Source: Macrostomum hystrix (lineage: Eukaryota; Animalia; Platyhelminthes). From it: a stretch of 64,000 nt of DNA. The position numbers and the translations under genes were made by a program. The notes beneath the pieces were generated by a model, which made no database searches, was not told where the DNA came from, and saw nothing but the letters and a program-made list of their open reading frames with translations. Where the stretch lies: contig CATNEN010000041.1 in the NCBI GenBank assembly GCA_950097015.1, forward strand, positions 1,488,001-1,552,000, given 5' to 3'. Shown piece after piece: positions 41,937 through 61,271 of this stretch. The stretch's first letter is position 1, and each line of letters starts with the position of its first letter.

Positions 41937-43934
41937 ATGTCTCGACGAGCGCTTCGAAAACTGCAGGAGGCTGAGGCGGCCGCGGCCGCTAGCAGAGCCG
42001 CAGACCAGGCTGAAGCGGGCGAAGAGCGGACGGAGGCTCGCAAGGAGGTGGAAGCCGTCGAGCCCGACGATCCGGCGGTGGAGGCAGCTCGTCGAGCGGG
42101 CGGCCGAGGCAACCAGTTCGCGCTGCTGATGTCGCAGGACTCAGAAGAAGATGAGGAAGAGGCGGAAGATGCCGAGGCGCAGGCGAAGGGAAATGAGGCC
42201 AAGAGGCCAGCGGACGAGGCCGTCAAGCCACAGCAGCAGCAGAAAAAGAAGAAGGGCAAGAAGCGCAAGCCGGACAAGCGGAAGGGCGAAGCTGCTGACG
42301 AAAATGAGGAGGACGAGTTCGCGGCGGCTCTGGCGGAATGCGCGATTTCCAGCCGGGGACCGGCTTCCGATGCGGCGCCGTCTGCAAGCAGCAGCAGCAA
42401 GCCGCTGCTCAGCGTAGACCTTCGCCTGCTGGACGGCGGACAGGAGCTGCGGCGGCTGTTTGGACAGGCAGCCGGCGAGTCGGCTGCGCGCCAGCCGTCC
42501 GCCAGGCGGCTTCAGCAACAGCAGCAGCAGCAGCATCCGGGTGGCTGGCGACGCGGACTGCTAGCCCAACCGAAGCCCACCTGGCCGCCGGTGGTCCGCC
42601 TCGGCCTGTCGATGTCGCCGGACAGCGAGACCTTCGCCTCGGACAGCTTCCCGTCTAGCAGCAGCGTGTACCGCTTCGAGCACAGCCGCGAGTACCAGCG
42701 CACCCAACTGGCCTTCGCCGACGCCGTAGACTCCGGCCTGCCGGACCGCCTGGCCGAAATCCTGCACCGTCAGCCCTACCACGTGGACAGCCTGCTGCAG
42801 CTAGCCGAGGTCTTCCGCCTCCAAGAGGACGCCGCCACCGCCGCCGACCTGGTCGAGCGCGCTCTCTACGCCATGGAGTGCGCCGCCGCGCCCGGCTTCA
42901 GCTTCTCCAGCGACCGCTGCCGGCTGAGCTTCGCCCGACGTGAGAACCGCGCCCTGTTCGCGGCCCTGCTGCGTCACGCCCTGTCACTGGCCGGCCGCTG
43001 CTGCCACCGAGCTTGCCTGGAGACCTGCAAACTGCTGCTCAGCCTCAGTCCCGCTGCCGATCCCATGGGCTCCCTGCTGCTCATGGACGCAGCCTGTCTC
43101 ATGTCCGGCCAGGAGGAGTTCCTGCTTCGCCTGCTGCAGGCTTGGGATCCGTCCAGGCACCTCAGCCAGCTGCCCAACTGGGCCTACTCCGGCGCCCTGG
43201 CCCGCTTCCGCCTGGCCCGCCCCGACGCCGACTCGGCGCTGGACGCGGCGCTCATCCAGTTCCCCGCCGTGCTCGGCCCGCTGCTGGCCCGGCTCAGCGT
43301 CGAGGCCGCACCAGCCGTGTCCACCTGCCGCCTTTTCTCCGCTGACGCCGCCGCCGGCGACTCCTCCGGCCTCCGCCAGCTCTGCAGCCTCTACGTGCAG
43401 CGCTGTGGCCACTGCTGGAAGGAGGCCGCCGCCGTTACCTTTCTGGTGTCCAGCGCCGCCCGCGTTGCTGCCGCCTTCACGGCCGTCAACCCGCCGGATC
43501 CGCGCTTCGCCGAGGCCGCCGAGCGGCGACTTCGACGATACAGGCGAACTCCGCTGAACGTCCTCCGGCACCTGATCGTGTCCGACGTGCGCGACGCCCT
43601 GTCCGACCTGCCCCCGGACATCGACCCGGCCGGATTAAACTCCTTCGACCCGCTGCCCCCGCCCAACTCAGTCTGCAGCTACGACCTCGACAAACTGCGT
43701 AGGCTGCGGGCCGGCGCCTCTGGCGGCGCTTCCAGCTCCGACGACGGCCTTCTGTCGGCCTTCCTGCGCTCCCTGATGCCCAACTTTGATCCCAATGCGC
43801 CACCACCGCAGCTGCAGGGAGCCGAGGGCGGTGGCGGCCTAGCCGGCCTGCTGGAGTCAGTGCGGCAGCTGCTGAACGGCCTTGGGCCGCCGCCGCCGCC
43901 ATTCGATGAAGGAGCCGACGGCGGCGTTGACTGA
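41937..43934 (+). CDS. TCF25: Transcription factor 25 / ribosome quality control subunit Rqc1 homologue (665 aa, single exon)
   Basis: MSRRALRKLQ start; FEHSREYQ; QPYHVDSLLQLAEV; AADLVERALY; RENRALF; ETCKLLLSLSP..DPMG; LSQLPNWAYS. These are the TCF25 family motifs. AATAAA at 44066-44071. Confidence 0.95.
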   Translation: MSRRALRKLQEAEAAAAASRAADQAEAGEERTEARKEVEAVEPDDPAVEAARRAGGRGNQFALLMSQDSEEDEEEAEDAEAQAKGNEAKRPADEAVKPQQQQKKKKGKKRKPDKRKGEAADENEEDEFAAALAECAISSRGPASDAAPSASSSSKPLLSVDLRLLDGGQELRRLFGQAAGESAARQPSARRLQQQQQQQHPGGWRRGLLAQPKPTWPPVVRLGLSMSPDSETFASDSFPSSSSVYRFEHSREYQRTQLAFADAVDSGLPDRLAEILHRQPYHVDSLLQLAEVFRLQEDAATAADLVERALYAMECAAAPGFSFSSDRCRLSFARRENRALFAALLRHALSLAGRCCHRACLETCKLLLSLSPAADPMGSLLLMDAACLMSGQEEFLLRLLQAWDPSRHLSQLPNWAYSGALARFRLARPDADSALDAALIQFPAVLGPLLARLSVEAAPAVSTCRLFSADAAAGDSSGLRQLCSLYVQRCGHCWKEAAAVTFLVSSAARVAAAFTAVNPPDPRFAEAAERRLRRYRRTPLNVLRHLIVSDVRDALSDLPPDIDPAGLNSFDPLPPPNSVCSYDLDKLRRLRAGASGGASSSDDGLLSAFLRSLMPNFDPNAPPPQLQGAEGGGGLAGLLESVRQLLNGLGPPPPPFDEGADGGVD

Positions 43935-44433: not shown

Positions 44434-44815
44434 GCTTCGCAGGTGTGATAAATCATAGTGGCTTCGCAGGTGTGATAAATTATAGTGGCTTCGCAGGTGT
44501 GATAAATCTCAGTGGCTTCGCAGGTGTGATAAATCTCAGTGGCTTCGCAGGTGTGATAAATCTCAGTGGCTTCGCAGGTGTGATAAATCTCAGTGGCTTC
44601 GCAGGTGTGATAAATCTAAGTGGCTTCAAATGTGTGATAAATCATAGTGGCTTCGCAGGTGTGATAAATCTCAGTGGCTTCGCAGGTGTGATAAATCTAA
44701 GTGGCTTCAAATGTGTGATAAATCTCAGTGGCTTCGCAGGTGTGATAAATCTCAGTAGCTTCAAAGGTTGTGATAAATCTAAGTGGCTTCACAGGTGTGA
44801 TAAATCTCAGTGGCT
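44434..44815. repeat. 27-bp minisatellite, about 14 copies (CTTCGCAGGTGTGATAAATCTCAGTGG)
   Basis: Tandem units between the 3' ends of TCF25 and the kinase gene. Confidence 0.95.
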
Positions 44816-45240
44816 CATTTCTCAACGTGACCAATACCATGGCACCTAGCACACGCATTGCACTGGTATTAGTCACTTGTGCCACTAGCATCTCAAACAG
44901 GGTGCAGCCATATGCGACACTGCGACTTGGTTTAGAAATTTTCAGGGGCCATGAAGCGAAATGGTTCAGAATCTTCCCTTGGTTGCCACAATTTTGTCTT
45001 AATGATTGAAACCAAAATGTTCTCGTGAGCTCCTCTGTAGAACAATCAGCTTGATTTGTCCCAGATAGGTAAGCATCACAGAGATCAACAATCAGCAGTT
45101 ACCGTGTTTTGGGCTGCAAATCTATGAAATCTGCCTCATGGAGTTATCATTCTAGTCTGAGTGTATTTTGATCTCATCAGGAAAACTCTGCAGCAAGCGA
45201 AAGGGAGTCCTTCTAGTTCTCGATGGCTGAGCAGATCAGA

Positions 45241-48200
45241 TCATTTACGGAGAAACCGATGCCTCAGAAGCTGCCTCGCGTCCGCTCGCTTCTTCGTCTC
45301 CGTCGCGACGCATCGACTGTAGAAGTCGCTCAGACTGTCGGAGAAGTCCGTGGGCAGACGGGGCATGCCGCGGTCTCGAATCTGTTCAGCGAGCTCTCGA
45401 GTGCTCAACTCGAAATTCGGAGGCTTCAAGGACAGCATCTCGAACACGGTGCAGCCGAACGCCCAGACGTCGGTCTGTGGTCTGTACTCCGCGCTGATGT
45501 CATCGGCAGTCAGCAGCTCAGGAGCCAGAAAGTGAGGACAACCGCAAGAAGGTCCGACTGCAGAGCCTAATTCGTTGCACTCTACCGCATGTGAGAAGTT
45601 AATCAGCTTGATGTCGCCCAGATGAGTGAGCAGGAGGCTGGAGCACCGGATGCTCCTGTGCAGAATGGCTGGCTTCTGGCAGTGCAGATATTCCATGGCT
45701 GAACAGATCTGAAATATTCGATTCAAGGCCCTCCTACTGACACTCGAAAGCGACTTCATGGTGAGATGTCTCCTTAATCTCTCCAACGCACCGCTTCCTA
45801 TGTGCTGATTCGCTAAACGCAGGCTACCAATAACAGCCTAACACGTACCACGCTATATATACAACAAGCGAAAGTGCGAAGCAGTCAACCGTTTCCCACT
45901 ACCTTAACTTCTTCCAACTCCTAGCCTCGCTAACAAACCAATCTAAAGTTTTAACAGTCAACAAGACTACAGACTCAATTATTAGACAACAGGCCTTAGC
46001 CTTGAACTGCTGAATATTCGACGAATCTGATAAGTACCACGATCCTGACTGCTTCTTACTTGCTCACTATCATTGTGCATTGCTTCAACAACACCAGTAA
46101 TTCGACTGTAAATATTATATAACACCTAAAAGAAGGTTTAACACCGCCGGAAACCTTGAGTCTAACTTACCGCTCATTGACCTAAACTAGGATGTACTTC
46201 ATTAGAAGCGAGAACTAGGAACCATAAACAATACAAGTATACACCATAAAGTATATCAATGGCTTCGTTTCAATGGGGGCGTGGCACTGCCTCCCCATTT
46301 CAGCAATGGGCCTCTACTTTGTGGTTGTTGCTAAGCAAGACTTTGGAGAGTGGGTGAGTTGGTTTCAAGAAACATAGATCTAATCTGGGAACGGGAACTC
46401 ACCTGAAGTGAAAACTTCATCACGGCTGCCTCGTCGAACGGCTTCTGCTGACATCGCATGAAGTCCCAGAGGGATTGGCCAGCAACGAGTTCAGTGAAGA
46501 TTCGGAGTTCGATTTCTGAGGGGCTCTCGAGCTTGAGAAACAGTAGGATGTTCGAGTGCCTGATACTGCTCAGGAGGCTGTACCCCAGCTTCGCATTCTC
46601 AATGAATTCTTTGAGTTTCTGCTGGCTCTCCATCGCTCTGTAGGTTTTGCCGTCAATCACCTTGACAGCCACAGTCTGCTGGCTGTCAGTGAATGCCTTG
46701 TAAACCTTGCTGGATCTACCTGCTGCAATGAGCTGAGCAGTCCCTCTATCTAGAAAGAAGTCCCAGCTGATGAACTCATTGTCGAGGGCGCCGGCAGTGG
46801 CGTTGTGAGCGTCCGGCTTCAGGAAGCGGTGCCGCAGCAGCTCCGCGGTGTCCGCTCGCCTCCTCGGCTCCTTCTCCACACACCGGCTGTAGAAATTCCT
46901 CAGGGGCTTGGAGACCCTGGCTGGCAGCTGGGGCATGTCTTGCCCGGTGACTTTCAGCGCAATGAGCTCCTTCCTGACCTTCCCATTGGGAGGCTGCATG
47001 GATAGCATCTCAAACACAGCGCAGCCGAGACCCCAGATGTCAGTCTTTGGAGAGTTTACCTGCCTAGATAGCGAGATGATCTGCTCGGGAGCCAAATAGC
47101 GCGCCCTGTAAATATCAGTTGAGTCAGTCTCATCCTGACTGAGGAGTGTCCTGATGGGGGCATCGATATCAGAGCCAACCAGTTTGATGACGCCCGCATA
47201 GGTGAGCATGATGCTGCGGCAGTTGATACCGTTGTGGGTGAGGCTGGGTTCGCAACTGTGCAGGAAGTCAAGCGCTGAGCAGATCTGCAATGCAGCTTAT
47301 TAGATTAATTCAGGTAATGAGCCAACAAAATTTGTGTTTCAATTAATCAAGCAGCTGAAACTCACCTGCTTGGAGAATTTCTTCACGGCGGGCTCTTCAA
47401 ACGGTCTCCGCAGGCGCTGCATCAGTTCGTGGAGACTGTGGCCTGCGATGAGCTCAGCAAAGATGCAGACCCGCTCGCGAGTGTGCTCGAATTTGAGAAA
47501 TCTTGCTATGCTCTGATGCCTGATGCTCTTCCACACCTTCAGGTCAGACTTGAATGTTTGCATCGCGTGCTGGCAGTCGGATGAGCCAGCCTCGTCCTCT
47601 GGAAGATAGATCACCTTCACGGCTGCTGTCTGGTGCCTGTCTGTGAATGCTATGTGGGTCCTGCTGAATCGACCTTCACAGATGACAGTTTTGAAGCCTG
47701 AATAGTCCAGGAGAAAATCCCAGCGGGTGAACTGACTGTCTATGACGTTGCAGTCATCAGTTCTGACGGCAGCGTCTGTGAGGAACCGGTGACCCAGCAG
47801 CTCCGTAATGTCCGCTCGCTTGTCCGATTGTCTATTCACGCAGCGTCGATAGAAGTTGCTCAGGCTGCACGAGGCACCGACTGGCAGCTGCGGCATGTGC
47901 TGCGCGGTCAACCGCAGCGCCAGCAGCTCCCTCCTGACTCTACTGTTTGGAGGCCGCATCGACAGCATCTCGAACAAGGAGCAACCGAGCGCCCAGACGT
48001 CAGTCTTGGCGGTGTGCAAAGGACGGCCTTCATTTGTAAACTGCTCAGGCGCCAGAAAAAGCCAAGCCCGCGCATCAGCCTCCTGGGGTTGCTGGGCCTG
48101 CGCCTTTTCAATAGCCGCCCTGGCAACACCGAAGCCAATCAATTTGATGACGCCCAGGCGAGTGAGCACAATGTTGGAGCAGTTGATATCCCTGTGCAGC

Positions 48201-48991
48201 ACAGCTGGGCTGCTGCTGTGAAGAAAACTGAGCGCAGTGCAAATCTGAGGAGGGAAAACAATAGAAAGAGCACGGGCTATTTCTAGATATTCAACGCTTC
48301 TCGTCGGGGTTTTAGGTGTCAAAAACCCTAATGTAAACATCCATTTTCTATTATCGGCTATTATTATTGATTAGATTGCATTGATAATATTGCTAATTGT
48401 TCTTCGGCAACAAATCGCAGATTATGTCGAGAATGTTAACTCGGACGGCTTAAAAAATGAGTTCATCGTAAATGACGGAAAATCCAACTGGTGGACTTTC
48501 ACGAGAGTCGGTCGTTCGGTCTGAAACATTCTCCGTGGTCTTTTCCCAGGGGAAAAGTAGCGAAGTATTTCTACTGTTAATTAGCAAGATTTAGATTTCT
48601 TACTTACCTGCAGTACAAATTCTTTTACTTGTGACTCCTCAAATGGCTTCTGCTGCTCATTCATCAGCTCCAGGAGGCTGTCTCCAGAGATGAGCTCAGT
48701 GAAGATATAGAACTCCAGGCCATCGGCTGAGCACTCGAACTTCAGAAACTGGATCACATTCGGGTGCCTGATCCTGCCCAGGATTTCGCATTCCGCAGTT
48801 CCCAGGCCGATCGCCTTGCGAAGGCTTCTCTGGCTCGGCGCACCGACCACTGGGACAACTTCAACTGCCACGGTCTGCTTGCGGTCGGTCCTGGCCTTGA
48901 ACATCCTGCCGAATCCGCCAGCCCAGACCCGCTGCTTCCTTCCCTTGACGATCGCGAATTTCCAAGCTCTGAAGTCGGGGTCCGCTTCCAT
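45241..48991 (-). CDS. Protein with three tandem STE11/MAP3K-like kinase domains, all predicted pseudokinases (about 870 aa)
   Basis: Exons 48991-48608, 48244-47366, 47284-46403 and 45708-45241; all introns are GT-AG, phase 0, at ..Q|IC. No internal stops. Each domain retains APE, TD(V/I)W..GC and HRFL. Possible extra upstream exons (49606-49523, about 49900-49660) joined through the acceptor at 49003-49004. Confidence 0.88.
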
Positions 48992-49234
48992 CCAGGTGGA
49001 TTCTGCATGTGTTGGGGTCAGCAGCCATCCAGGTGGATTCTGCATGTGTTGGGGTCAGCAGCCATCCAGGTGGATTCTGCATGTGTTGGGGTCAGCAGCC
49101 ATCCAGGTGGATTCTGCATGTGTTGGGGTCAGCAGCCATCCAGGTGGATTCTGCATGTGTTGGGGTCAGCAGCCATCCAGGTGGATTCTGCATGTGTTGG
49201 GGTCAGCAGCCATCCAGGTGGATTCTGCATGTGT
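48989..49234. repeat. 37-bp minisatellite, about 6.6 copies, built from the kinase acceptor/start-codon region
   Basis: CATCCAGG recurs at 48989, 49026, 49063, 49100, 49137, 49174 and 49211. Confidence 0.95.
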
Positions 49235-55151: not shown

Positions 55152-56442
55152 AAACCAAAAGTGTTTGAGGCAAATTTTCTGTCACTAGTTTTCAAAGTAG
55201 TTGCCACCAGCTTGTACGTATTTCCTCATTCGGTGAAACCACTGCGTCCAGGCTCCAGCCCACTGTTCTTCAGGCACTGCTGAAACCACCCGCTCGAACT
55301 CGATTCTTGCTGCTTCAGGGCTCGTGTAGGATGGTCGTAGGGGGCGAGTGGGGTCAGTGGCTAACGTCGCTGCCTCGCACTCCAAAGGACGCTAGTTTGA
55401 TTCACCCTTCAAGTCACGATTAATTTCGTTACTTGTTCGGGGGGTTTGGACAGTAGCGACCGGCGGAGGTGCACCATATTTCGTGCAATCAAAGCTTGAA
55501 AAATAGCTTCGCTCCTACCTTTCTGTGTGCCTGTTCTGCGTTGTATGAGTTATGTGCGTTGGCGCTGGGGCGTTAGACCTTGCGGGGGGTGGCTGGGGGG
55601 CGGGTGTACACCGCCGCGCGCTCATCTAGATTTCCGTCAGCGCGATTGGATAAAGTGTACACTCGCCACCCGGCCCCCCCCTGAGGACTGATTTCTATCA
55701 GCCTTCCGCCCCGGCTTGGTCTGCTCTGTGCGTGTGCGGGCCTGGGGTGAGAGGCACTCCGGCTGCCGCCCCCTTCCCCGCTTGGCTTGCTGCTGTGTGT
55801 GTGTGAGGTGCCTGCTCAGGGGAGGCGGCGCGATGGGCGGCTTTCGCCTAGTTCGCCGGCCTGGGGGCATGCCGTTCCTGAGTTTGTGCGTCAGGTGCCC
55901 CAGGCCCCCCTGCAAAGTAAGTAAGTAAGGATGGTCGTAACCGCTGCCGATCCAATGCCAAGAGCCTCTCTGATCTCGGCACAGGTCAGTCGCCGGTCTT
56001 CGTCGATCATCCTCCGGACGGCAGCGATGTTTTCGTCCGTGACAGCAGAAGCTGGACGTCCCGACCGAGGCTCGTCATCAAGGCTGCTCCGGCCCCACTT
56101 GCATTCGCTGTACCACCGAAAAACGGTGGCACGTGAAGGGGCTTGGTCTCCAAAGGCAGCACGGAAACTTTCAACGCATTGCTCTTGCGTGAGACCTTTA
56201 CGCTGGTCGTAAACTATCATGGCACGAAAGTCGCGGTTTGTCAACTCCATTGGAGCTGAAGAGTGACTGTGAAAAATTGACAAGAGCGCAAAGGCTGAAA
56301 ATGTATACTCAATCATTTTGGTAGAGTATGTACATTAAGGTGGTATAGTATGTACATTAAGGTGGTAGAGTATGTACATTAAAAGGCGTGCAGCTGCGAC
56401 TTATAAGTCAGACGTATCTCAAAACTTTCAGTACGCCCCTCA
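55119..56442 (-). mobile_element. Internally deleted mariner transposon interrupted by a SINE
   Basis: 25-bp TIRs (3 mismatches) flanked by TA at 55117-55118 and 56443-56444. ATG at 56250: MELTNRDFRAMI..TVFRWY..LDDEPRSGRP (HTH region). C-terminus ..WFHRMRKYVQAGGNYFEN* at 55337-55185. The DD34D core is absent. Confidence 0.9.
55340..55927 (+). mobile_element. tRNA-derived SINE, family A (588 bp), with a 12-bp TSD
   Basis: TSD AGGATGGTCGTA at 55328-55339 and 55928-55939; (GTAA)n tail; homologous to 21500-22070. Confidence 0.9.
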
Positions 56443-56844: not shown

Positions 56845-59800
56845 TGTCAAGCCGTGCTCAGGAGTATAAGGCAAGACTGCCCGTAGGCTTGGTTTGGGTT
56901 AGTAGCGAATTTAGTTTATTAGTCACGATGTTTCACGATACACTTGCATATATATATAAGTAGACGAGTCAACAAGGCTTAAAAGTCAACAGGTGTTGAG
57001 TACATCAATAATCAATATTCAGGCTGCGTACATTGGGTCAGAGTGCGGTTGGCGCGCAGGCCTGCAGATCTACCACAGTTCACTTGCTTAACACAGTTCA
57101 CGGTTCATTCACGGCTCAAACCCCGGCACGTCATCTCCCCCCTTCGAACCGCTCGGGCGGCACGCCCCGATTCGCACGGAGGTTGTAGCTCGGTCTCTGG
57201 GGAGTCGCGGCCGGTGACGGCACTCTGCCACTGGCCGCTGGCGGCGGATCTGCGGTCTCCCCTGGCGCGCTTGCCTGGGTCAAGGACGCAGGCATGTTTT
57301 CATGTCGCGCTTCAGGCAAGTCGGCGGGTCTCGGAGCAACTTCGTGGCTGACTGCGGCTGTCGCAACGTCTCCATTGCCGCCGGCTTCGTGCCGACGCAG
57401 TTGGTCTAGGTGGGCGAGCGTGACCCGGTCACCCTGTCGCATGATCAGCGCCGTGTTGGACCCTTTTTGCGCCAGGAACTCCGCCTTCTCCGGTGTGGCA
57501 CTCGGCGTTGGAGCGTACCAGACCTCAGAGCGGATCGCTGTCTTCATGGTGATGGGGTTTCGCAGCTGCCTTCCCATTAGTTGCGCCGGGCTGAACTCCC
57601 TTCCGGCGTGCGGTACACATCGGTAGTTCAGTAGGATCCGTGCCAGGAACGCGTCGTACGGCTCCTGCTGATCCCAGCCCGCCGAGGCCACCTTGATTGT
57701 CTGCACCATTCGCTCGGCCAGGCCGTTGGACTGGGGATGATATGGTGGGGTTTTCACAGCGCGGCAGCCGATTCTGTGCAGCCAGCTCATCAACCCCTCA
57801 TCATGGAACTCTGCAGCATTGTCACTCACCAGGGTTCTCGGCACTCCGTTGCGGGCGAAGACCTCCTGGAGGACCCGCCTGACGGTGGCGGCGCTCTTGT
57901 CGGGCACTCGGATAGCCTCCGGCCAGGCAGACATGGCGTCGACCAGGATCAGCAGGAGCCCGACCTTCGGAACGTGAGCGTGGTCCATGTGCACGCGCCC
58001 CCAAGGCTCAGACTCGGCGGGCCATTGGTGGACACTGCTGTGACTACTTTGACGTTGCTTGGCGCAGGTGTGGCAGGCACGGACGAATCCTTCGACGTCA
58101 CCGCAGTAACCTGGCCACCAGACGGAGTTGCGGACCAGCGCTCGAGTGCTCGTGGCGCCCGGATGCGCCCCGCTGTGCACCAATTCCAGGACGCGACTGC
58201 GTAGTGAAGCAGGAATGACCGGGCGATCGCCGTAGCACACCACCGAGCCGTCTAGAGTGAGCGCATGTCGAATTGCTTTGAATTGCCGTTCCGCAGGCGA
58301 GCAACCCGACCAACGGTTTCCAGCTATCCTTCGAGTGATGTCCGCTAGCAGTCTATCGCGCTTTGTCTCCTCTGCCAGCTCAGTCCAGCCGATGACGCTT
58401 TCACCGGCCCAATGCACCAGGTGTTGTTGGGGTGCCGCCTCATATGGATCGTCCGGGACGTCAGCGAAGTCAAGACGAGACAACGCATCGGCGTGCGGGA
58501 TGTCGACTCCGCGGGCGTACTCAATAGCGAAGTCAAATCCCATGAGGCGGATCGCCCAGCGCAGGATGCGGGCATTGGCGACTTTAGGGAGCTGCTGCCG
58601 TGCCCCGAACAGAAACTCGAGAGGGCGGTGGTCGGTTCGCAGAGTGAAGCGCTTGCCCAGTAGGAACTGACGGGACCTCTCCATTGACCACACAATCGCC
58701 AGCGCCTCCCGTTCGATGTTGGAGTAGCGTGTCTCTGCCTCCGTCAACCGCCTGCTGAAGTAGATGACGGGATGACCTTCTTGCGTGAGCACGGCGGCCA
58801 CCGCCTTCTCACTGGCGTCGGTCGTGAGCGTTGTTTCCTTTGTCCGGTCGTATGGCTGGATGATCGGGCTGGAGCTCAGGAGCTTCTTTAGCTGGTGGAA
58901 GGCCGCTTCCTGTGCAGTTGTCCAAGTGAACTCCACTCCCTTCTTGCGCAGCTGGTTCAGGGGCTCGACGATGTGCGCATAATTGTTGACGAACCTTCCG
59001 AAGAAATTGCAGAGGCCGAGGAAGGACTCCAACTGGCGACGGTCGCGTGGTGCAGAGATTTCTTTGATCTTGCTGACCAGTCCAGGGTCCGGAGAGATTC
59101 CTTCTGCACCGATTCTGTAGCCGAGGAACTTGACGCTCTTGGCGCCCAAGTTGGACTTGGCGAGATTTATGTTCATTCCGGCTGCCTGGAGGATCTTAAT
59201 TACTTCATCGACTTTGACTTTGAGATCTTCGCTGGAGCGACCTCCGAGCAGAATATCGTCTTGATAGATGACCTTGCCGTTCACCTCCTCAAGGGTAGTC
59301 TCCATGGCCTTTTGAAAGATGGCGGATGCTGACTTGAGGCCCGGCACGAGTCGGGTGTAGCGAAACAGACCGAGTGGGGTCGCAATCGTAGTGACTTCCC
59401 TGCTCTTCTCCTCGAGTTCAATCTGTAGATACGCGTCAGATAGGTCGAGGGTCGCGAAGTCAGTCATTCCGGCGACATCCGAGAAGATGGTCTCGACGGT
59501 TGGCATTGGATAGGTGTCTCCGCACACTTGATGATTGACCCCCGCCTTGTAATCGGCACAAATTCTGATGTTGCCGTTGGGTTTGAGGACGCAGACGATT
59601 GGTGACGCCCACTCGCTACCGCCTTCGGTCACTGGTTCAATTATTCCTTCAGCCTGGAGGCGCTTCAGCTCTTGGTTGACGCGGTCGCGCAGGTGCAGCG
59701 GCACCGCTCTGGCTGCGCAGTAGAATGGCTTGGCACCTTCGATCAGCTTGATTCTGGCTTGGAAACCCTTCAGGCAATTGAGGTGCTGTACTGCAGTGCC

Positions 59801-61271
59801 TTGGCCACCGACTGTCTGCCTCTCAGAGTTCCAATCCAGGTTGTCGAGGCCCAACAGCCCGTGTGACTTGTGTGCTGCAGTGACAACCAAGTCGACAGTG
59901 CGGAACTTGTCTTTATCATTCCACGTTGCTGTGAACTCGCCCAGGGTCTTGATTATTGATCCATCAAATTGCCTCAGGATTCGCTTGGACTTCCTCAGCG
60001 CTGGACGCCCGAGCATCTCCCAGTGGCCCCTGGGAATGAGGCTTACGTCGGCGCCTGTGTCCACTTGCATCTGCAGCTCTTTGCCGTTGATCTTGACGCG
60101 CCGGAAGATGCCTTTTCGCTCCTTGTTCTCCGGTCTGATGACGAAGACGTTGGCGGCATCTGGCTTCGGGGCGGCATCATCGTCCTCCTCCCAGGTCTCC
60201 AAGTGCACAGTGCGGGACCTGCAAACGGCTGCGTAGTGGTTTTTCTTGTTGCAGGTGGTGCACCTTTTGCCGAAGGCGGGGCATGAGCCCTGCTGGTGCG
60301 AACCGCCACAGTATTGGCACTTCGTCCTGGTTGTGTGCCTCGGCGATCTGGTGTCCGGAGGAAGCTGTGGAGGTGCGGCGCGCCGACCTGCATAGGCGAT
60401 GCTTGACTCGGTGGTGACGGTGGGCCCGGTGCCGGCGTTGTAGTAGCGAATCTGCTCCAACTGCTCAAGCTCTTGCAGCACATCGGTCAGCAGCATGTCG
60501 ATGCCCTGCATCCTCTCCAGCAGTCTGCGCTTGTGGTCCACGGAGGCAAGACCGTCCACGAGCCTCATGGTGATGAGTTCGTCCTCACAGGTCTGTTTCG
60601 AGCCTAGCTTCTCAAAACTGCACGAGGCAGCAGCTGCTCGGAGCCGGCGGTAGTACGATGCGACGCCTTCGCTCGGATCCTGCCTGAGGGAGAGGAATTT
60701 CACCCTCTCGGCAATGGTGAGGCGCCGCTTGGGCCGAATGGTTGCATCGATGATGTCGCGGATCTGTGCGAATGTTTTGGTCTCCAGGCTGTCTGGGGCA
60801 GCCATGAGGGTCAGGGTTCTCAGTGCCTTGAGGCCTGCCCTCGAGAGGAATAGATCAGTGATCTGGTGTTCCTCTTCCGAATCCTTCAGTTTCTTGGTCC
60901 GTGCAGCGGCCGCGAAACTGAGCAGCCAGGCTTCGGCTGTGTCTGGATCTTCCAGGTTTAGTTCAGATGCTTGCGACGCCATTGTCAAGCCGTGCTCAGG
61001 AGTATAAGGCAAGACTGCCCGTAGGCTTGGTTTGGGTTAGTAGCGAATTTAGTTTATTAGTCACGATGTTTCACGATACACTTGCATATATATATAAGTA
61101 GACGAGTCAACAAGGCTTAAAAGTCAACAGGTGTTGAGTACATCAATAATCAATATTCAGGCTGCGTACATTGGGTCAGAGTGCGGTTGGCGCGCAGGCC
61201 TGCAGATCTACCACAGTTCACTTGCTTAACACAGTTCACGGTTCATTCACGGCTCAAACCCCGGCACGTCA
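56845..61271 (-). mobile_element. Full-length Ty3/gypsy LTR retrotransposon (Mag-clade-like), 4427 bp
   Basis: 289-bp LTRs at 56845-57133 and 60983-61271 with no difference found by eye, TG..CA ends, 5-bp TSD TAACT (56840-56844, 61272-61276), PBS TGGCG.. next to the 5' LTR and PPT GAAGGGGGGAGA next to the 3' LTR. Confidence 0.97.
57131..60982 (-). CDS. Gag-Pol polyprotein (1283 aa): Gag with double CCHC, protease, RT, RNase H, integrase
   Basis: CQYCGGSH..CPAFGKRCTTCNKKNH; VDTGAD; ICADYK; DLSDAY; IYQDDILL; TTDAS; H..HPG..CHTC; MDH..SDNAAEF..NGLAERMV. Domain order PR-RT-RH-IN; no stops. Confidence 0.97.
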   Translation of the reverse strand: MASQASELNLEDPDTAEAWLLSFAAAARTKKLKDSEEEHQITDLFLSRAGLKALRTLTLMAAPDSLETKTFAQIRDIIDATIRPKRRLTIAERVKFLSLRQDPSEGVASYYRRLRAAAASCSFEKLGSKQTCEDELITMRLVDGLASVDHKRRLLERMQGIDMLLTDVLQELEQLEQIRYYNAGTGPTVTTESSIAYAGRRAAPPQLPPDTRSPRHTTRTKCQYCGGSHQQGSCPAFGKRCTTCNKKNHYAAVCRSRTVHLETWEEDDDAAPKPDAANVFVIRPENKERKGIFRRVKINGKELQMQVDTGADVSLIPRGHWEMLGRPALRKSKRILRQFDGSIIKTLGEFTATWNDKDKFRTVDLVVTAAHKSHGLLGLDNLDWNSERQTVGGQGTAVQHLNCLKGFQARIKLIEGAKPFYCAARAVPLHLRDRVNQELKRLQAEGIIEPVTEGGSEWASPIVCVLKPNGNIRICADYKAGVNHQVCGDTYPMPTVETIFSDVAGMTDFATLDLSDAYLQIELEEKSREVTTIATPLGLFRYTRLVPGLKSASAIFQKAMETTLEEVNGKVIYQDDILLGGRSSEDLKVKVDEVIKILQAAGMNINLAKSNLGAKSVKFLGYRIGAEGISPDPGLVSKIKEISAPRDRRQLESFLGLCNFFGRFVNNYAHIVEPLNQLRKKGVEFTWTTAQEAAFHQLKKLLSSSPIIQPYDRTKETTLTTDASEKAVAAVLTQEGHPVIYFSRRLTEAETRYSNIEREALAIVWSMERSRQFLLGKRFTLRTDHRPLEFLFGARQQLPKVANARILRWAIRLMGFDFAIEYARGVDIPHADALSRLDFADVPDDPYEAAPQQHLVHWAGESVIGWTELAEETKRDRLLADITRRIAGNRWSGCSPAERQFKAIRHALTLDGSVVCYGDRPVIPASLRSRVLELVHSGAHPGATSTRALVRNSVWWPGYCGDVEGFVRACHTCAKQRQSSHSSVHQWPAESEPWGRVHMDHAHVPKVGLLLILVDAMSAWPEAIRVPDKSAATVRRVLQEVFARNGVPRTLVSDNAAEFHDEGLMSWLHRIGCRAVKTPPYHPQSNGLAERMVQTIKVASAGWDQQEPYDAFLARILLNYRCVPHAGREFSPAQLMGRQLRNPITMKTAIRSEVWYAPTPSATPEKAEFLAQKGSNTALIMRQGDRVTLAHLDQLRRHEAGGNGDVATAAVSHEVAPRPADLPEARHENMPASLTQASAPGETADPPPAASGRVPSPAATPQRPSYNLRANRGVPPERFEGGR

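What the first reader, a model, noticed from the sequence alone, without database searches (positions are those of the whole stretch)
45241..48991. Triple tandem pseudokinase: an intact 870-aa ORF whose three kinase domains have each lost catalysis differently
Seen: D1 has VAVE in place of the beta3 Lys, keeps HRD (HRDINCSN) and has DFG changed to GFG. D2 has AAVK, HRD changed to HNG and DFG to GSD. D3 has VAVK, HRD changed to HRS and DFG to NFS. All Gly-loops are degenerate, yet APE, TD(V/I)W..GC and the terminal HRFL are kept and there are no stops over four exons. Established: loss of the beta3 Lys, HRD Asp or DFG Asp defines pseudokinases; multi-kinase chains are rare in animals, while tandem kinase-pseudokinase proteins act as immune sensors in plants and pseudokinase arrays act as effectors in parasites. 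Inference: a selected multivalent scaffold or decoy/sensor from a MAP3K-like ancestor, possibly a lineage-specific family.
Basis: partly seen in the sequence, partly recalled or inferred. Interest (0 to 1): 0.78.

Follow-up and report, generated by a model that had tools for sequence, protein, structure and literature searches.

The report
Flatworm gene with three dead kinases
A free-living flatworm (very probably Macrostomum hystrix) carries an intact four-exon gene that strings together three kinase-like domains, all missing the residues needed for catalysis but keeping the residues that hold the fold, so it looks like a selected non-catalytic offshoot of a large, undescribed, genus-specific kinase family; what it does is untested.

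Summary
On the minus strand, 45241-48991, four phase-0 GT..AG exons (128+293+294+155 codons) encode 870 aa with three Pfam Pkinase domains.

The genome is very probably Macrostomum hystrix. The gene belongs to a Macrostomum-restricted STE-like kinase family with about 50 further C-lobe exons here. Almost all members share one intron between the lobes, and most have canonical motifs.

Relatives include a conserved ankyrin + kinase + kinase gene and a single-domain pseudokinase (L009), which groups with domains 1 and 2 and shares their DFG and catalytic-loop changes. No orthologue above 50% identity was found in 1.8 billion representatives.

- **Selection:** family-invariant catalytic/ATP-site cells are lost 30/48, other invariant cells 21/204.
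- **Rates:** between-domain dN/dS is 0.2-0.5, with dS near saturation.
- **Open frame:** simulated neutral change leaves it stop-free in only 1% of runs at 0.05 substitutions per site.
- **Control:** a frame-broken fourth C-lobe relic lies just after the stop codon.

Expression, ATP binding and function are untested; scaffold or decoy is inference.

I never built the spliced protein; all searches went exon by exon. The scan has noted other pseudokinase genes in this genome, but in the look-ups I made it had no other note on this gene.

The parts
48608..48991 (-). Exon 1: N-lobe of domain 1 (128 codons). The beta3 Lys is replaced (VAVE) and the first Gly of the Gly-loop is lost.
   Evidence: Pfam Pkinase positions 6-106, E 7.6e-10.
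48245..48607 (-). Intron 1 (363 nt, GT..AG, phase 0), at the N-lobe/C-lobe boundary.
   Evidence: The paralogues have an intron at the same position. The same exon junction is continuous in annotated M. lignano proteins.
47774..48244 (-). Exon 2, first part: C-lobe of domain 1 (HRDINCSN, GFG, APE kept).
47366..47773 (-). Exon 2, second part: linker and N-lobe of domain 2 (AAVK), in one open frame with the preceding C-lobe.
   Evidence: AlphaFold2 of the exon-2 product gives pLDDT 89.5, low only in linker residues 161-165.
47285..47365 (-). Intron 2 (81 nt, GT..AG, phase 0).
46814..47284 (-). Exon 3, first part: C-lobe of domain 2 (HNGINCRS, GSD). This is the most degenerate domain: all 9 family-invariant catalytic C-lobe positions are changed.
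46403..46813 (-). Exon 3, second part: linker and N-lobe of domain 3 (VAVK).
45709..46402 (-). Intron 3 (694 nt, GT..AG, phase 0).
45241..45708 (-). Exon 4: C-lobe of domain 3 (HRSIRCSS, NFS, APE kept) and the stop codon TGA at 45243-45241.
44790..45118 (-). Decayed relic of a fourth C-lobe just after the stop codon. Its pieces lie in the right order but in three different frames, with stops and deletions. They are the catalytic-loop/beta7-8 region, FMAPE, and AYGCTLFEML. The relic runs into the 27-bp minisatellite.
   Evidence: tblastn on the window gives E 7e-4, 0.007 and 0.019 for collinear pieces. Three-frame translation.
48977..49234 (.). 37-bp x 7 minisatellite abutting and overlapping the proposed start codon.
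44434..44815 (.). 27-bp x 14 minisatellite at the 3' side, continuous with the tail of the relic.

Best explanation
This is a real protein-coding gene of a Macrostomum flatworm, very probably M. hystrix. It encodes three tandem STE-like pseudokinase domains.

Origin (inferred). It arose inside a genus-restricted kinase family whose members share a phase-0 intron between the N-lobe and the C-lobe. Once a C-lobe exon had been fused in frame to the next N-lobe, recombination within the homologous introns could add or swap whole units without breaking the frame.

Timing of the catalytic losses. The DFG Asp and the catalytic-loop Lys were probably lost before domains 1 and 2 were duplicated. The same changes are present in L009, the single-domain relative that groups with them.

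Selection (shown). Since then the domains have diverged fast, but under purifying selection that keeps the fold and the C-lobe surfaces while the ATP and catalytic site decays.

Mechanism (inferred, not shown). The protein is probably cytosolic and non-catalytic. It would act through protein-protein contacts as a multivalent scaffold, an allosteric partner, or a competitive decoy for the active paralogues, their regulators or their substrates.
For: - Gene anatomy and motifs.
- Species: G000 has 220,453,370 bases in 42 contigs, matching the published M. hystrix assembly. All close protein hits are M. lignano proteins at 50% identity or less.
- Family: about 50 further C-lobe exons at E <= 1e-10 in this genome. 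They have the same intron and mostly canonical GEGGFGKVY / VAVK / HRDIKCSN / DFG motifs.
- Phylogeny: (L009,(C1,C2)) has support 95/95 and C1+C2 has 97/87. Most paralogues pair with an M. lignano orthologue; this clade does not, and its terminal branches are long, 0.6-1.2 against a median of 0.16.
- Shared codon changes in DFG and the catalytic loop.
- Selective loss: 30 of 48 catalytic/ATP-site family-invariant cells are lost against 21 of 204 other invariant cells, Fisher p = 2e-13.
- Rates: dN/dS is 0.2-0.5 between domains with dS at 1.1 or more; active paralogue pairs give 0.18-0.30.
- Open frame: neutral simulation leaves it stop-free in 18% of runs at K = 0.02, 1% at 0.05 and 0.1% at 0.10.
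- Local controls for real decay: the frame-broken relic at 44790-45118, and L024, a frameshifted copy of a paralogue that keeps a long N-lobe stretch identical to it.
- Fold: both lobes of the exon-2 product are predicted confidently, and the best structural matches are kinases.
Against: - There is no evidence of transcription or of the splice joins.
- The start codon lies in a minisatellite and no promoter is identified.
- The neighbourhood is rich in satellites and transposons.
- No orthologue was found in M. lignano or anywhere else, so selection on the present-day gene cannot be measured.
- The dN/dS values average over the whole time since duplication and rest on near-saturated dS.
- The placement of long branches is uncertain: C3 and the N-lobes are unresolved.
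- The catalytic column set was chosen from general kinase knowledge after I had seen the alignment, and its cells are not independent.
- Nothing bears directly on scaffold versus decoy versus some other role.
Confidence: 0.6

Rival explanations
1. It is a recently dead gene: an unexpressed, decaying duplicate whose frame has not yet been hit by a stop.
For: - It sits in a satellite- and transposon-rich stretch with a decayed kinase relic next to it.
- The 5' end abuts a minisatellite.
- No orthologue was found.
- Its branches are the longest in the family.
- Other family members are demonstrably dead, for example L024.
Against: - 870 codons with no stop or frameshift, and three intact GT..AG phase-0 introns.
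- In the simulation a stop-free frame survives in only 1% of runs at 0.05 neutral substitutions per site, so any neutral phase must be very short.
- The domains differ at dS of 1.1 or more with dN/dS 0.2-0.5.
- Fold-defining invariant residues are 90% retained.
- The DFG and catalytic-loop losses look older than the duplication of domains 1 and 2.
Confidence: 0.12
2. One or more domains are atypical but active kinases or nucleotide-binding switches. For example, domain 1 keeps the HRD Asp and the catalytic Asn, with GFG as in Mg-independent CASK. The protein would then signal catalytically.
For: - Domain 1 keeps HRD and the catalytic-loop Asn.
- Domains 2 and 3 keep the beta3 Lys.
- From my own knowledge, some sequence-defined pseudokinases, such as CASK and WNK, are active. 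A recent review notes such exceptions (PMC13519141 abstract).
Against: - No domain has the full set of catalytic residues.
- Domain 1 lacks the beta3 Lys, the family-invariant Glu in the alphaC region and the DFG Asp.
- Domains 2 and 3 lack the catalytic Asp, the Asn and the DFG Asp.
- All three lack the first Gly of the Gly-loop and the activation-loop Thr.
- No WNK-like compensating Lys appears in the Gly-loops.
Confidence: 0.07
3. The three-domain chain is not one protein. The locus is transcribed as separate or alternative shorter products, and the triple reading is only a gene-model artefact.
For: - There are no transcript data.
- Internal ATG codons exist.
- M. lignano model P0021, with three near-identical domains, may itself be a merged model of tandem genes.
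Against: - Exons 2 and 3 each hold a C-lobe and the next N-lobe in one uninterrupted frame. Single-domain paralogues stop right after the final H.FL motif.
- A half-domain product would not fold as a kinase.
- The same fused exon exists in the conserved tandem paralogue, and it is continuous in annotated M. lignano proteins from several loci.
Confidence: 0.08

Closest known systems
Macrostomum ankyrin + kinase + kinase gene (M. lignano Mlig002250, PAA71750.1 = P0020; orthologue in this genome at G000:C41:3428326-3438171)
   Same: - Same family signature (FTD..Q.VAVK, HRDIKCSN context, RAD..LL.H.FL).
- Same intron between the lobes.
- Same kind of fused C-lobe + N-lobe exon.
- 41% identity over the whole of exon 2.
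   Different: - It has about 590 residues of ankyrin-repeat region at the N-terminus.
- It has two domains rather than three, and both are canonical.
- It is conserved between the two species on short branches.
- The tree does not place it next to the triple gene, although AU tests do not exclude that (p 0.10 and 0.29).
L009, single-domain pseudokinase of the same genome (G000:C34:4088981-4089448 plus its N-lobe exon)
   Same: - It groups with domains 1 and 2 in the C-lobe tree (95/95).
- It shares Lys->Asn in the catalytic loop, Asp->Gly in DFG (GFG), and Glu->Ala two residues after the family's FGLA motif (that Ala with domain 1 only).
- It has long branches and no M. lignano partner.
   Different: - It has one domain.
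- Its N-lobe still has the beta3 Lys and the family's alphaC-region Glu.
- Its HRD is changed to HRH.
Plant tandem kinase proteins (WTK1/Yr15, RPG1; WTK3/Rwt4 with three kinase-derived domains)
   Same: - Chains of kinase-like domains with no other domain.
- They arise by duplication or fusion.
- They contain pseudokinase domains thought to act as baits or regulators.
   Different: - They have an independent origin from plant kinase lineages.
- The family as first defined pairs a putative active kinase with a pseudokinase, whereas here all three domains are degenerate.
- Their immune role is genetically proven; here there are no functional data.
JAK and GCN2 (pseudokinase next to an active kinase in one chain)
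   Same: Intramolecular tandem of kinase-fold domains derived by duplication. The TYK2 pseudokinase-kinase chain is the top Foldseek hit for the exon-2 product, because it spans a C-lobe followed by an N-lobe. Background from the review read.
   Different: JAK and GCN2 keep one active domain that the dead one regulates, and they carry other domains. Here there is no active domain and no accessory domain.
STRADalpha-type STE20-like pseudokinases (from my own knowledge)
   Same: A STE-group fold without catalysis that acts by binding and allosterically activating an active kinase.
   Different: STRAD has a single domain, is ancient and conserved, and binds ATP. There is no evidence that the flatworm protein binds a kinase or a nucleotide.

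Membership tests
Protein kinase-like superfamily (Pfam PF00069) | Significant, in-register match of each domain to the Pkinase profile and a bilobal kinase fold. | tested here: met
   Exon 1 matches profile positions 6-106. Exons 2, 3 and 4 start at profile position 107 and run to 263. E-values range from 7.6e-10 to 1.5e-30. The AF2 model of the exon-2 product has pLDDT 89.5, and its Foldseek hits are kinases. No whole domain was folded, because that would need joined exons.
Pseudokinase (sequence definition) | Absence of at least one of the beta3 Lys, the HRD Asp and the DFG Asp (definition as in the abstract of PMC13519141). | tested here: met
   D1 lacks the Lys (Glu) and the DFG Asp (Gly). 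D2 lacks the HRD Asp (Gly) and the DFG Asp (Gly). D3 lacks the HRD Asp (Ser) and the DFG Asp (Asn)..
Pseudokinase (biochemical) | No phosphotransfer activity. | not testable with these tools
   This needs purified protein and kinase or nucleotide-binding assays.
Macrostomum-restricted STE-like kinase family (undescribed; annotated only as 'protein kinase domain-containing protein') | Family signature motifs, a shared phase-0 intron between Pkinase positions 106 and 107, and placement inside the family tree. | tested here: met
   The only hits below 1e-30 that I identified are M. lignano proteins.
STE group / MAP3K (STE11-MEKK-like) | Closer to STE-group kinases than to other groups in a kinome-wide classification. 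| tested here: inconclusive
   The best PDB sequence matches are SLK, MST3/4, PAK, ASK1 (MAP3K5) and MAP2K6, at E 1e-18 to 1e-20. The nearest non-Macrostomum representatives have MEKK-like catalytic loops. I made no kinome-wide tree or classifier run.
Plant tandem kinase proteins (TKP) | Descent from plant kinase lineages and a kinase + pseudokinase pair acting in immunity. | tested here: not met
   The architecture is similar, but the origin lies within a flatworm family and no domain is canonical. An immune role was not tested.
JAK-type pseudokinase-kinase | An active C-terminal kinase domain regulated by the adjacent pseudokinase, with FERM/SH2 domains. | tested here: not met
   There is no canonical domain and no other Pfam domain in any exon.

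The most novel reading that the evidence does not exclude
The triple dead-kinase chain is an animal counterpart of plant tandem-kinase baits. It would be a multivalent decoy or sensor built from copies of an expanded ankyrin-kinase family. It either reports or absorbs attack on those kinases, or titrates their activators. It would be assembled and reshuffled through the family's phase-0 inter-lobe intron.
Probability: 0.1. Interest if true: 0.75.

Novelty: new variant of a known kind. Interest (0 to 1): 0.45.

Why it matters
Pseudokinases and two-domain kinase chains are well known. A three-domain chain in an animal with no active domain at all is unusual, and the family it comes from has not been described in any paper I could search.

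The locus gives a compact natural series in one genus:
- active single-domain kinases;
- a conserved ankyrin + kinase + kinase gene;
- a single-domain pseudokinase;
- a triple pseudokinase;
- frame-broken relics.

This series could show how catalytic sites decay while the fold is kept. It could also show how an intron placed between the two lobes lets kinase modules be duplicated in frame. Macrostomum species are tractable (RNAi, in situ hybridisation, RNA-seq), so the question of what an all-dead kinase chain does can be tested directly. Without expression or partner data, though, the biological importance remains open.

Tried and rejected
- **Orthologue search.** The word-based search with exon 2 and the full HMMER scan of 1.84 billion representatives found nothing above 50% identity. 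Per-domain dN/dS on orthologues was therefore not possible.
- **Expression evidence.** No M. hystrix-derived protein for this locus appears in the collections. I do not read that as non-expression, because I could not show that this species' transcripts are in those collections at all.
- **N-lobe phylogeny**. It is too poorly resolved to date the duplications. N1 groups with a different subclade (98/92), but the AU test does not reject one clade for the three N-lobes (p 0.235).
- **Single origin of the fused exon with the ankyrin tandem gene.** Neither shown nor rejected.
- **Upstream ankyrin or other exons.** None were seen within 8 kb upstream; that stretch holds only satellites, a mariner piece and a gypsy-like element.
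- **WNK-like compensating Lys.** Not present.
- **Literature.** No paper describes this family or a Macrostomum kinome. A reported M. lignano caspase with a kinase-like pro-domain is a different gene, and I did not test whether it is related.
- I did not build, fold or search the joined 870-aa protein or any whole domain. The AF2 model covers the exon-2 product only.
Full report
**What is there**

The region 45241-48991 holds four open stretches on the minus strand. Reading the minus strand gives four exons:
- 48991-48608
- 48244-47366
- 47284-46403
- 45708-45244, followed by TGA at 45243-45241

They are joined by introns of 363, 81 and 694 nt, all GT..AG and all in phase 0. The exons translate without stops to 128, 293, 294 and 155 residues, 870 in all. 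The other two sense frames of the same exons carry 34 and 37 stops.

Pfam Pkinase matches exon 1 at profile positions 6-106. Exons 2, 3 and 4 each match from position 107 to 263. Exons 2 and 3 have a second matched stretch for the following N-lobe. Each intron therefore cuts a kinase domain at the same point between the lobes. Exons 2 and 3 each carry the C-lobe of one domain and the N-lobe of the next in one frame.

- D1: VAVE, HRDINCSN, GFG
- D2: AAVK, HNGINCRS, GSD
- D3: VAVK, HRSIRCSS, NFS
- APE, TD(V/I)W..GC and HRFL are kept in all three.

The three domains are 38-48% identical to one another, so the duplications are old or the domains evolve fast.

Every search, alignment, tree and fold used single exons or half-domains by reference. 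No whole domain and no 870-aa chain was built, searched or folded.

**Whose genome**

The window is G000:C41:1488001-1552000 of a 220,453,370-base, 42-contig assembly. Every close protein hit is from Macrostomum lignano, at 50% identity or less. The published M. hystrix assembly is described as about 220 Mb in 42 contigs (PMC10468722). The genome is therefore very probably M. hystrix, a free-living flatworm. It is not human, and not a parasite.

**The family**

A six-frame search of the genome with exon 2 gave 128 matches at E <= 0.001. About 50 of them are further C-lobe exons at E <= 1e-10 (these are lower bounds).

In the 45 or so loci I fetched, most members are two-exon, single-domain genes. 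They have an intron at the same position and, in the subfamily closest to this gene, canonical motifs:
- GEGGFGKVYKAFTD..QTVAVK
- HRDIKCSN
- DFG
- GT..FMAPE
- KTDVWAFGC
- RAD..LL.H.FL

Some carry ankyrin repeats or long low-complexity N-termini within the first exon. M. lignano relatives also carry Pfam ankyrin domains.

A second subfamily, clustered on contig C1 at 22-26 Mb, has HRDINCSN together with an intact DFG.

Degenerate members recur:
- L009: HRH, GFG
- L034: HRS, GFG
- L036: HRN with NFG in one copy; HRN with DFG kept in the other
- L044: HRN, GFS and GFT

One other locus, C41:3428326-3438171, has the same fused C-lobe + N-lobe exon. Both of its domains are canonical.

**Relatives elsewhere**

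I scanned 1.84 billion cluster representatives with exon 2. The best hit is P0020 at 41% identity, with the whole exon matched in one stretch. P0020 is M. lignano Mlig002250, 1180 aa. It has about 590 residues of ankyrin-repeat region followed by two canonical kinase domains. It is the orthologue of the tandem paralogue above.

Two further M. lignano models are tandem:
- P0021 has three nearly identical HRDINCSN domains. It is a fragment and possibly a merged model.
- P0028 is a kinase plus an HRN/GFG pseudokinase.

Nothing exceeds 50% identity, so no orthologue of the triple gene is on record.

Beyond Macrostomum, the nearest representatives have MEKK-like catalytic loops. The nearest solved structures by sequence are STE-group kinases: SLK, MST3/4, PAK, ASK1 and MAP2K6, at E 1e-18 to 1e-20.

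No paper I could find describes this family or a Macrostomum kinome.

**Where the gene sits in the family**

In the C-lobe tree, nearly every paralogue of this genome pairs with an M. lignano orthologue on short branches. C1 and C2 are sisters (97/87). L009 joins them (95/95). C3 falls in the same subclade but is unresolved.

A tree that holds C1, C2, C3 and L009 together is only 0.01 log-likelihood units worse (AU p 0.39). These rows have the longest terminal branches in the tree, 0.6-1.2 against a median of 0.16, and no M. lignano partner.

The N-lobe tree is poorly resolved. N1 groups with another subclade (98/92), which hints at exon exchange between paralogues. One clade for the three N-lobes is not rejected (p 0.235).

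Descent of the fused exon from the ankyrin tandem gene is neither shown nor rejected (p 0.10 and 0.29).

Codons fit shared ancestry of two key losses:
- The DFG Asp is GAC in active members. It is GGC in D1 and D2, GGT in L009 and AAC in D3.
- The catalytic-loop Lys is AAG in active members. It is AAC in D1 and D2, AAT in L009 and CGG in D3.

By parsimony, then, the ancestor of L009, D1 and D2 already lacked the DFG Asp. The D1/D2 divergence took place in the pseudokinase state. The statement that each domain lost catalysis differently is only partly right.

**Is it selected?** Four lines of evidence bear on this.

1. Site pattern. I took columns at least 90% conserved among 26 (C-lobe) and 32 (N-lobe) active relatives.
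   - The three domains have lost 30 of 48 cells at positions known to bind ATP or catalyse. These are the three Gly-loop glycines, the beta2 Val, the Ala and Lys of VAVK, the alphaC-region Glu, the HRD Arg and Asp, the catalytic-loop Lys and Asn, DFG, and the activation-loop GT.
   - They have lost only 21 of 204 other invariant cells. Fisher p = 2e-13.
   - Active members lose a median of 0-1 such cells.
   - Caveats: I fixed the catalytic set from general knowledge after seeing the alignment, and the cells share ancestry.
2. Rates. Nei-Gojobori estimates between domains give dS 1.1 to above 3 (near saturation), dN 0.46-0.68 and dN/dS 0.2-0.5. Pairs of active paralogues give 0.18-0.30. These are averages over the whole time since duplication.
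3. Open frame. Random substitution, applied exon by exon, leaves the frame stop-free in 18% of runs at 0.02 substitutions per site. The figure is 1% at 0.05, 0.1% at 0.10, and none at 0.2 or more. Indels were ignored, which is conservative.
4. Local controls.
   - Directly after the stop codon, at 45118-44790, lies a relic of a fourth C-lobe. Its pieces follow in the right order but in three frames, with stops and deletions. It runs into a 27-bp minisatellite.
   - L024 is a frameshifted copy of the L005 kinase that keeps a long N-lobe stretch identical to it.
   - Dead copies in this genome therefore break quickly, and the triple gene has not.

AlphaFold2 on the exon-2 product gives pLDDT 89.5. 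Confidence is low only in the linker (residues 161-165) and is reduced in the activation loop. Foldseek returns kinases, with STE20-group members and the TYK2 pseudokinase-kinase chain at the top.

**What argues for caution**

- I could reach no transcript evidence.
- The proposed ATG lies in the last unit of a 37-bp x 7 minisatellite. An in-frame ATG 18 codons upstream is also possible.
- The 8 kb upstream holds satellites, a mariner piece and a gypsy-like element, and no further coding exon that I could see.
- The gene has no known orthologue, so present-day constraint is unmeasured.

**How it most likely works**

Shown:
- An intact gene model whose exon junctions match those that are continuous in annotated M. 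lignano proteins.
- Three kinase-fold modules that lack the catalytic apparatus.
- Conservation of fold residues.

Inferred:
- The protein does not transfer phosphate. It acts through retained C-lobe and N-lobe surfaces as a multivalent scaffold, allosteric partner or competitor of the active paralogues, or of their regulators or substrates. JAK JH2, GCN2, STRAD and plant tandem-kinase proteins are precedents.
- The architecture most plausibly grew by recombination within the shared phase-0 intron, after one C-lobe exon had been fused in frame to the next N-lobe.

I give 0.6 to this reading as a whole. That breaks down to roughly 0.75 for 'real, selected pseudokinase gene' and about 0.35 for the specific scaffold/regulator mechanism.

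Rivals:
- A very recently dead gene: 0.12.
- Residual atypical activity or nucleotide switching: 0.07.
- Separate shorter products: 0.08.

**Comparison and novelty**

It is a member of the protein kinase superfamily and, by sequence, a pseudokinase. It is also a member of an undescribed Macrostomum-restricted STE-like family. It is not a plant TKP or a JAK-type protein by descent or composition, though it resembles them in architecture.

In the papers I searched I found no animal chain of three kinase-fold domains with no active one. I rate it a new variant of a known kind, with interest 0.45.

This scan has flagged several other pseudokinase genes in the same genome, including a tandem pseudokinase-caspase fusion. 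Those are different loci, and I did not test whether they are related to this family.

Noticed in passing
window 44790-45118 (-): Frame-broken relic of a fourth kinase C-lobe immediately after the gene's stop codon. Its tail is continuous with the 27-bp x 14 minisatellite at 44434-44815, which seems to have grown out of it.
   Followed up: partly
window 48977-49234: A 37-bp x 7 minisatellite whose last unit supplies the proposed start codon. Each unit carries ATG triplets, so the true 5' end of the gene is uncertain.
   Followed up: partly
G000:C41:3428326-3438171 (L003, L021, L026): A paralogue with two canonical kinase domains and the same fused C-lobe + N-lobe exon. The last C-lobe exon lies about 7.9 kb downstream. 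It is the orthologue of M. lignano Mlig002250 (P0020), which has a long ankyrin-repeat N-terminus.
   Followed up: partly
G000:C34:4088981-4089448 and its N-lobe exon (L009:430-807, 1501-1950): An intact single-domain pseudokinase (HRHINSNN, GFG, Gly-loop GDDGIG) that groups with domains 1 and 2 of the triple gene. It has no M. lignano partner.
   Followed up: partly
G000:C41:409089-409859 (L024): A frameshifted copy of the kinase at G000:C10:267648-268565 (L005) that keeps a long N-lobe stretch identical to it. This is a clear recent pseudogene of the same family.
   Followed up: no
G000:C1, about 22.1-26.3 Mb (L017, L019, L020, L029, L030, L033-L035, L039, L043): A large cluster of closely similar kinases with Asn in place of the catalytic-loop Lys (HRDINCSN) but an intact DFG and an AAK beta3 motif. 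One neighbour (L034:1536) has HRS and GFG.
   Followed up: no
window 41937-43934 (+): A GC-rich (0.69) single open frame of 665 aa with a full-length TCF25 domain (E 7e-94). It is the nearest conserved gene to the pseudokinase.
   Followed up: no
window 57131-61012 (-) and 55891-56316 (-): An intact-looking gypsy-type polyprotein frame of 1293 aa (protease, RT, RNase H, integrase), and a mariner HTH fragment, both upstream of the gene.
   Followed up: no
L012 (G000:C7:3617361-3618314): The inter-lobe intron of this paralogue is open in frame, so N-lobe, intron and C-lobe read as one 340-aa frame. An ORF caller would report a false intronless kinase here.
   Followed up: no
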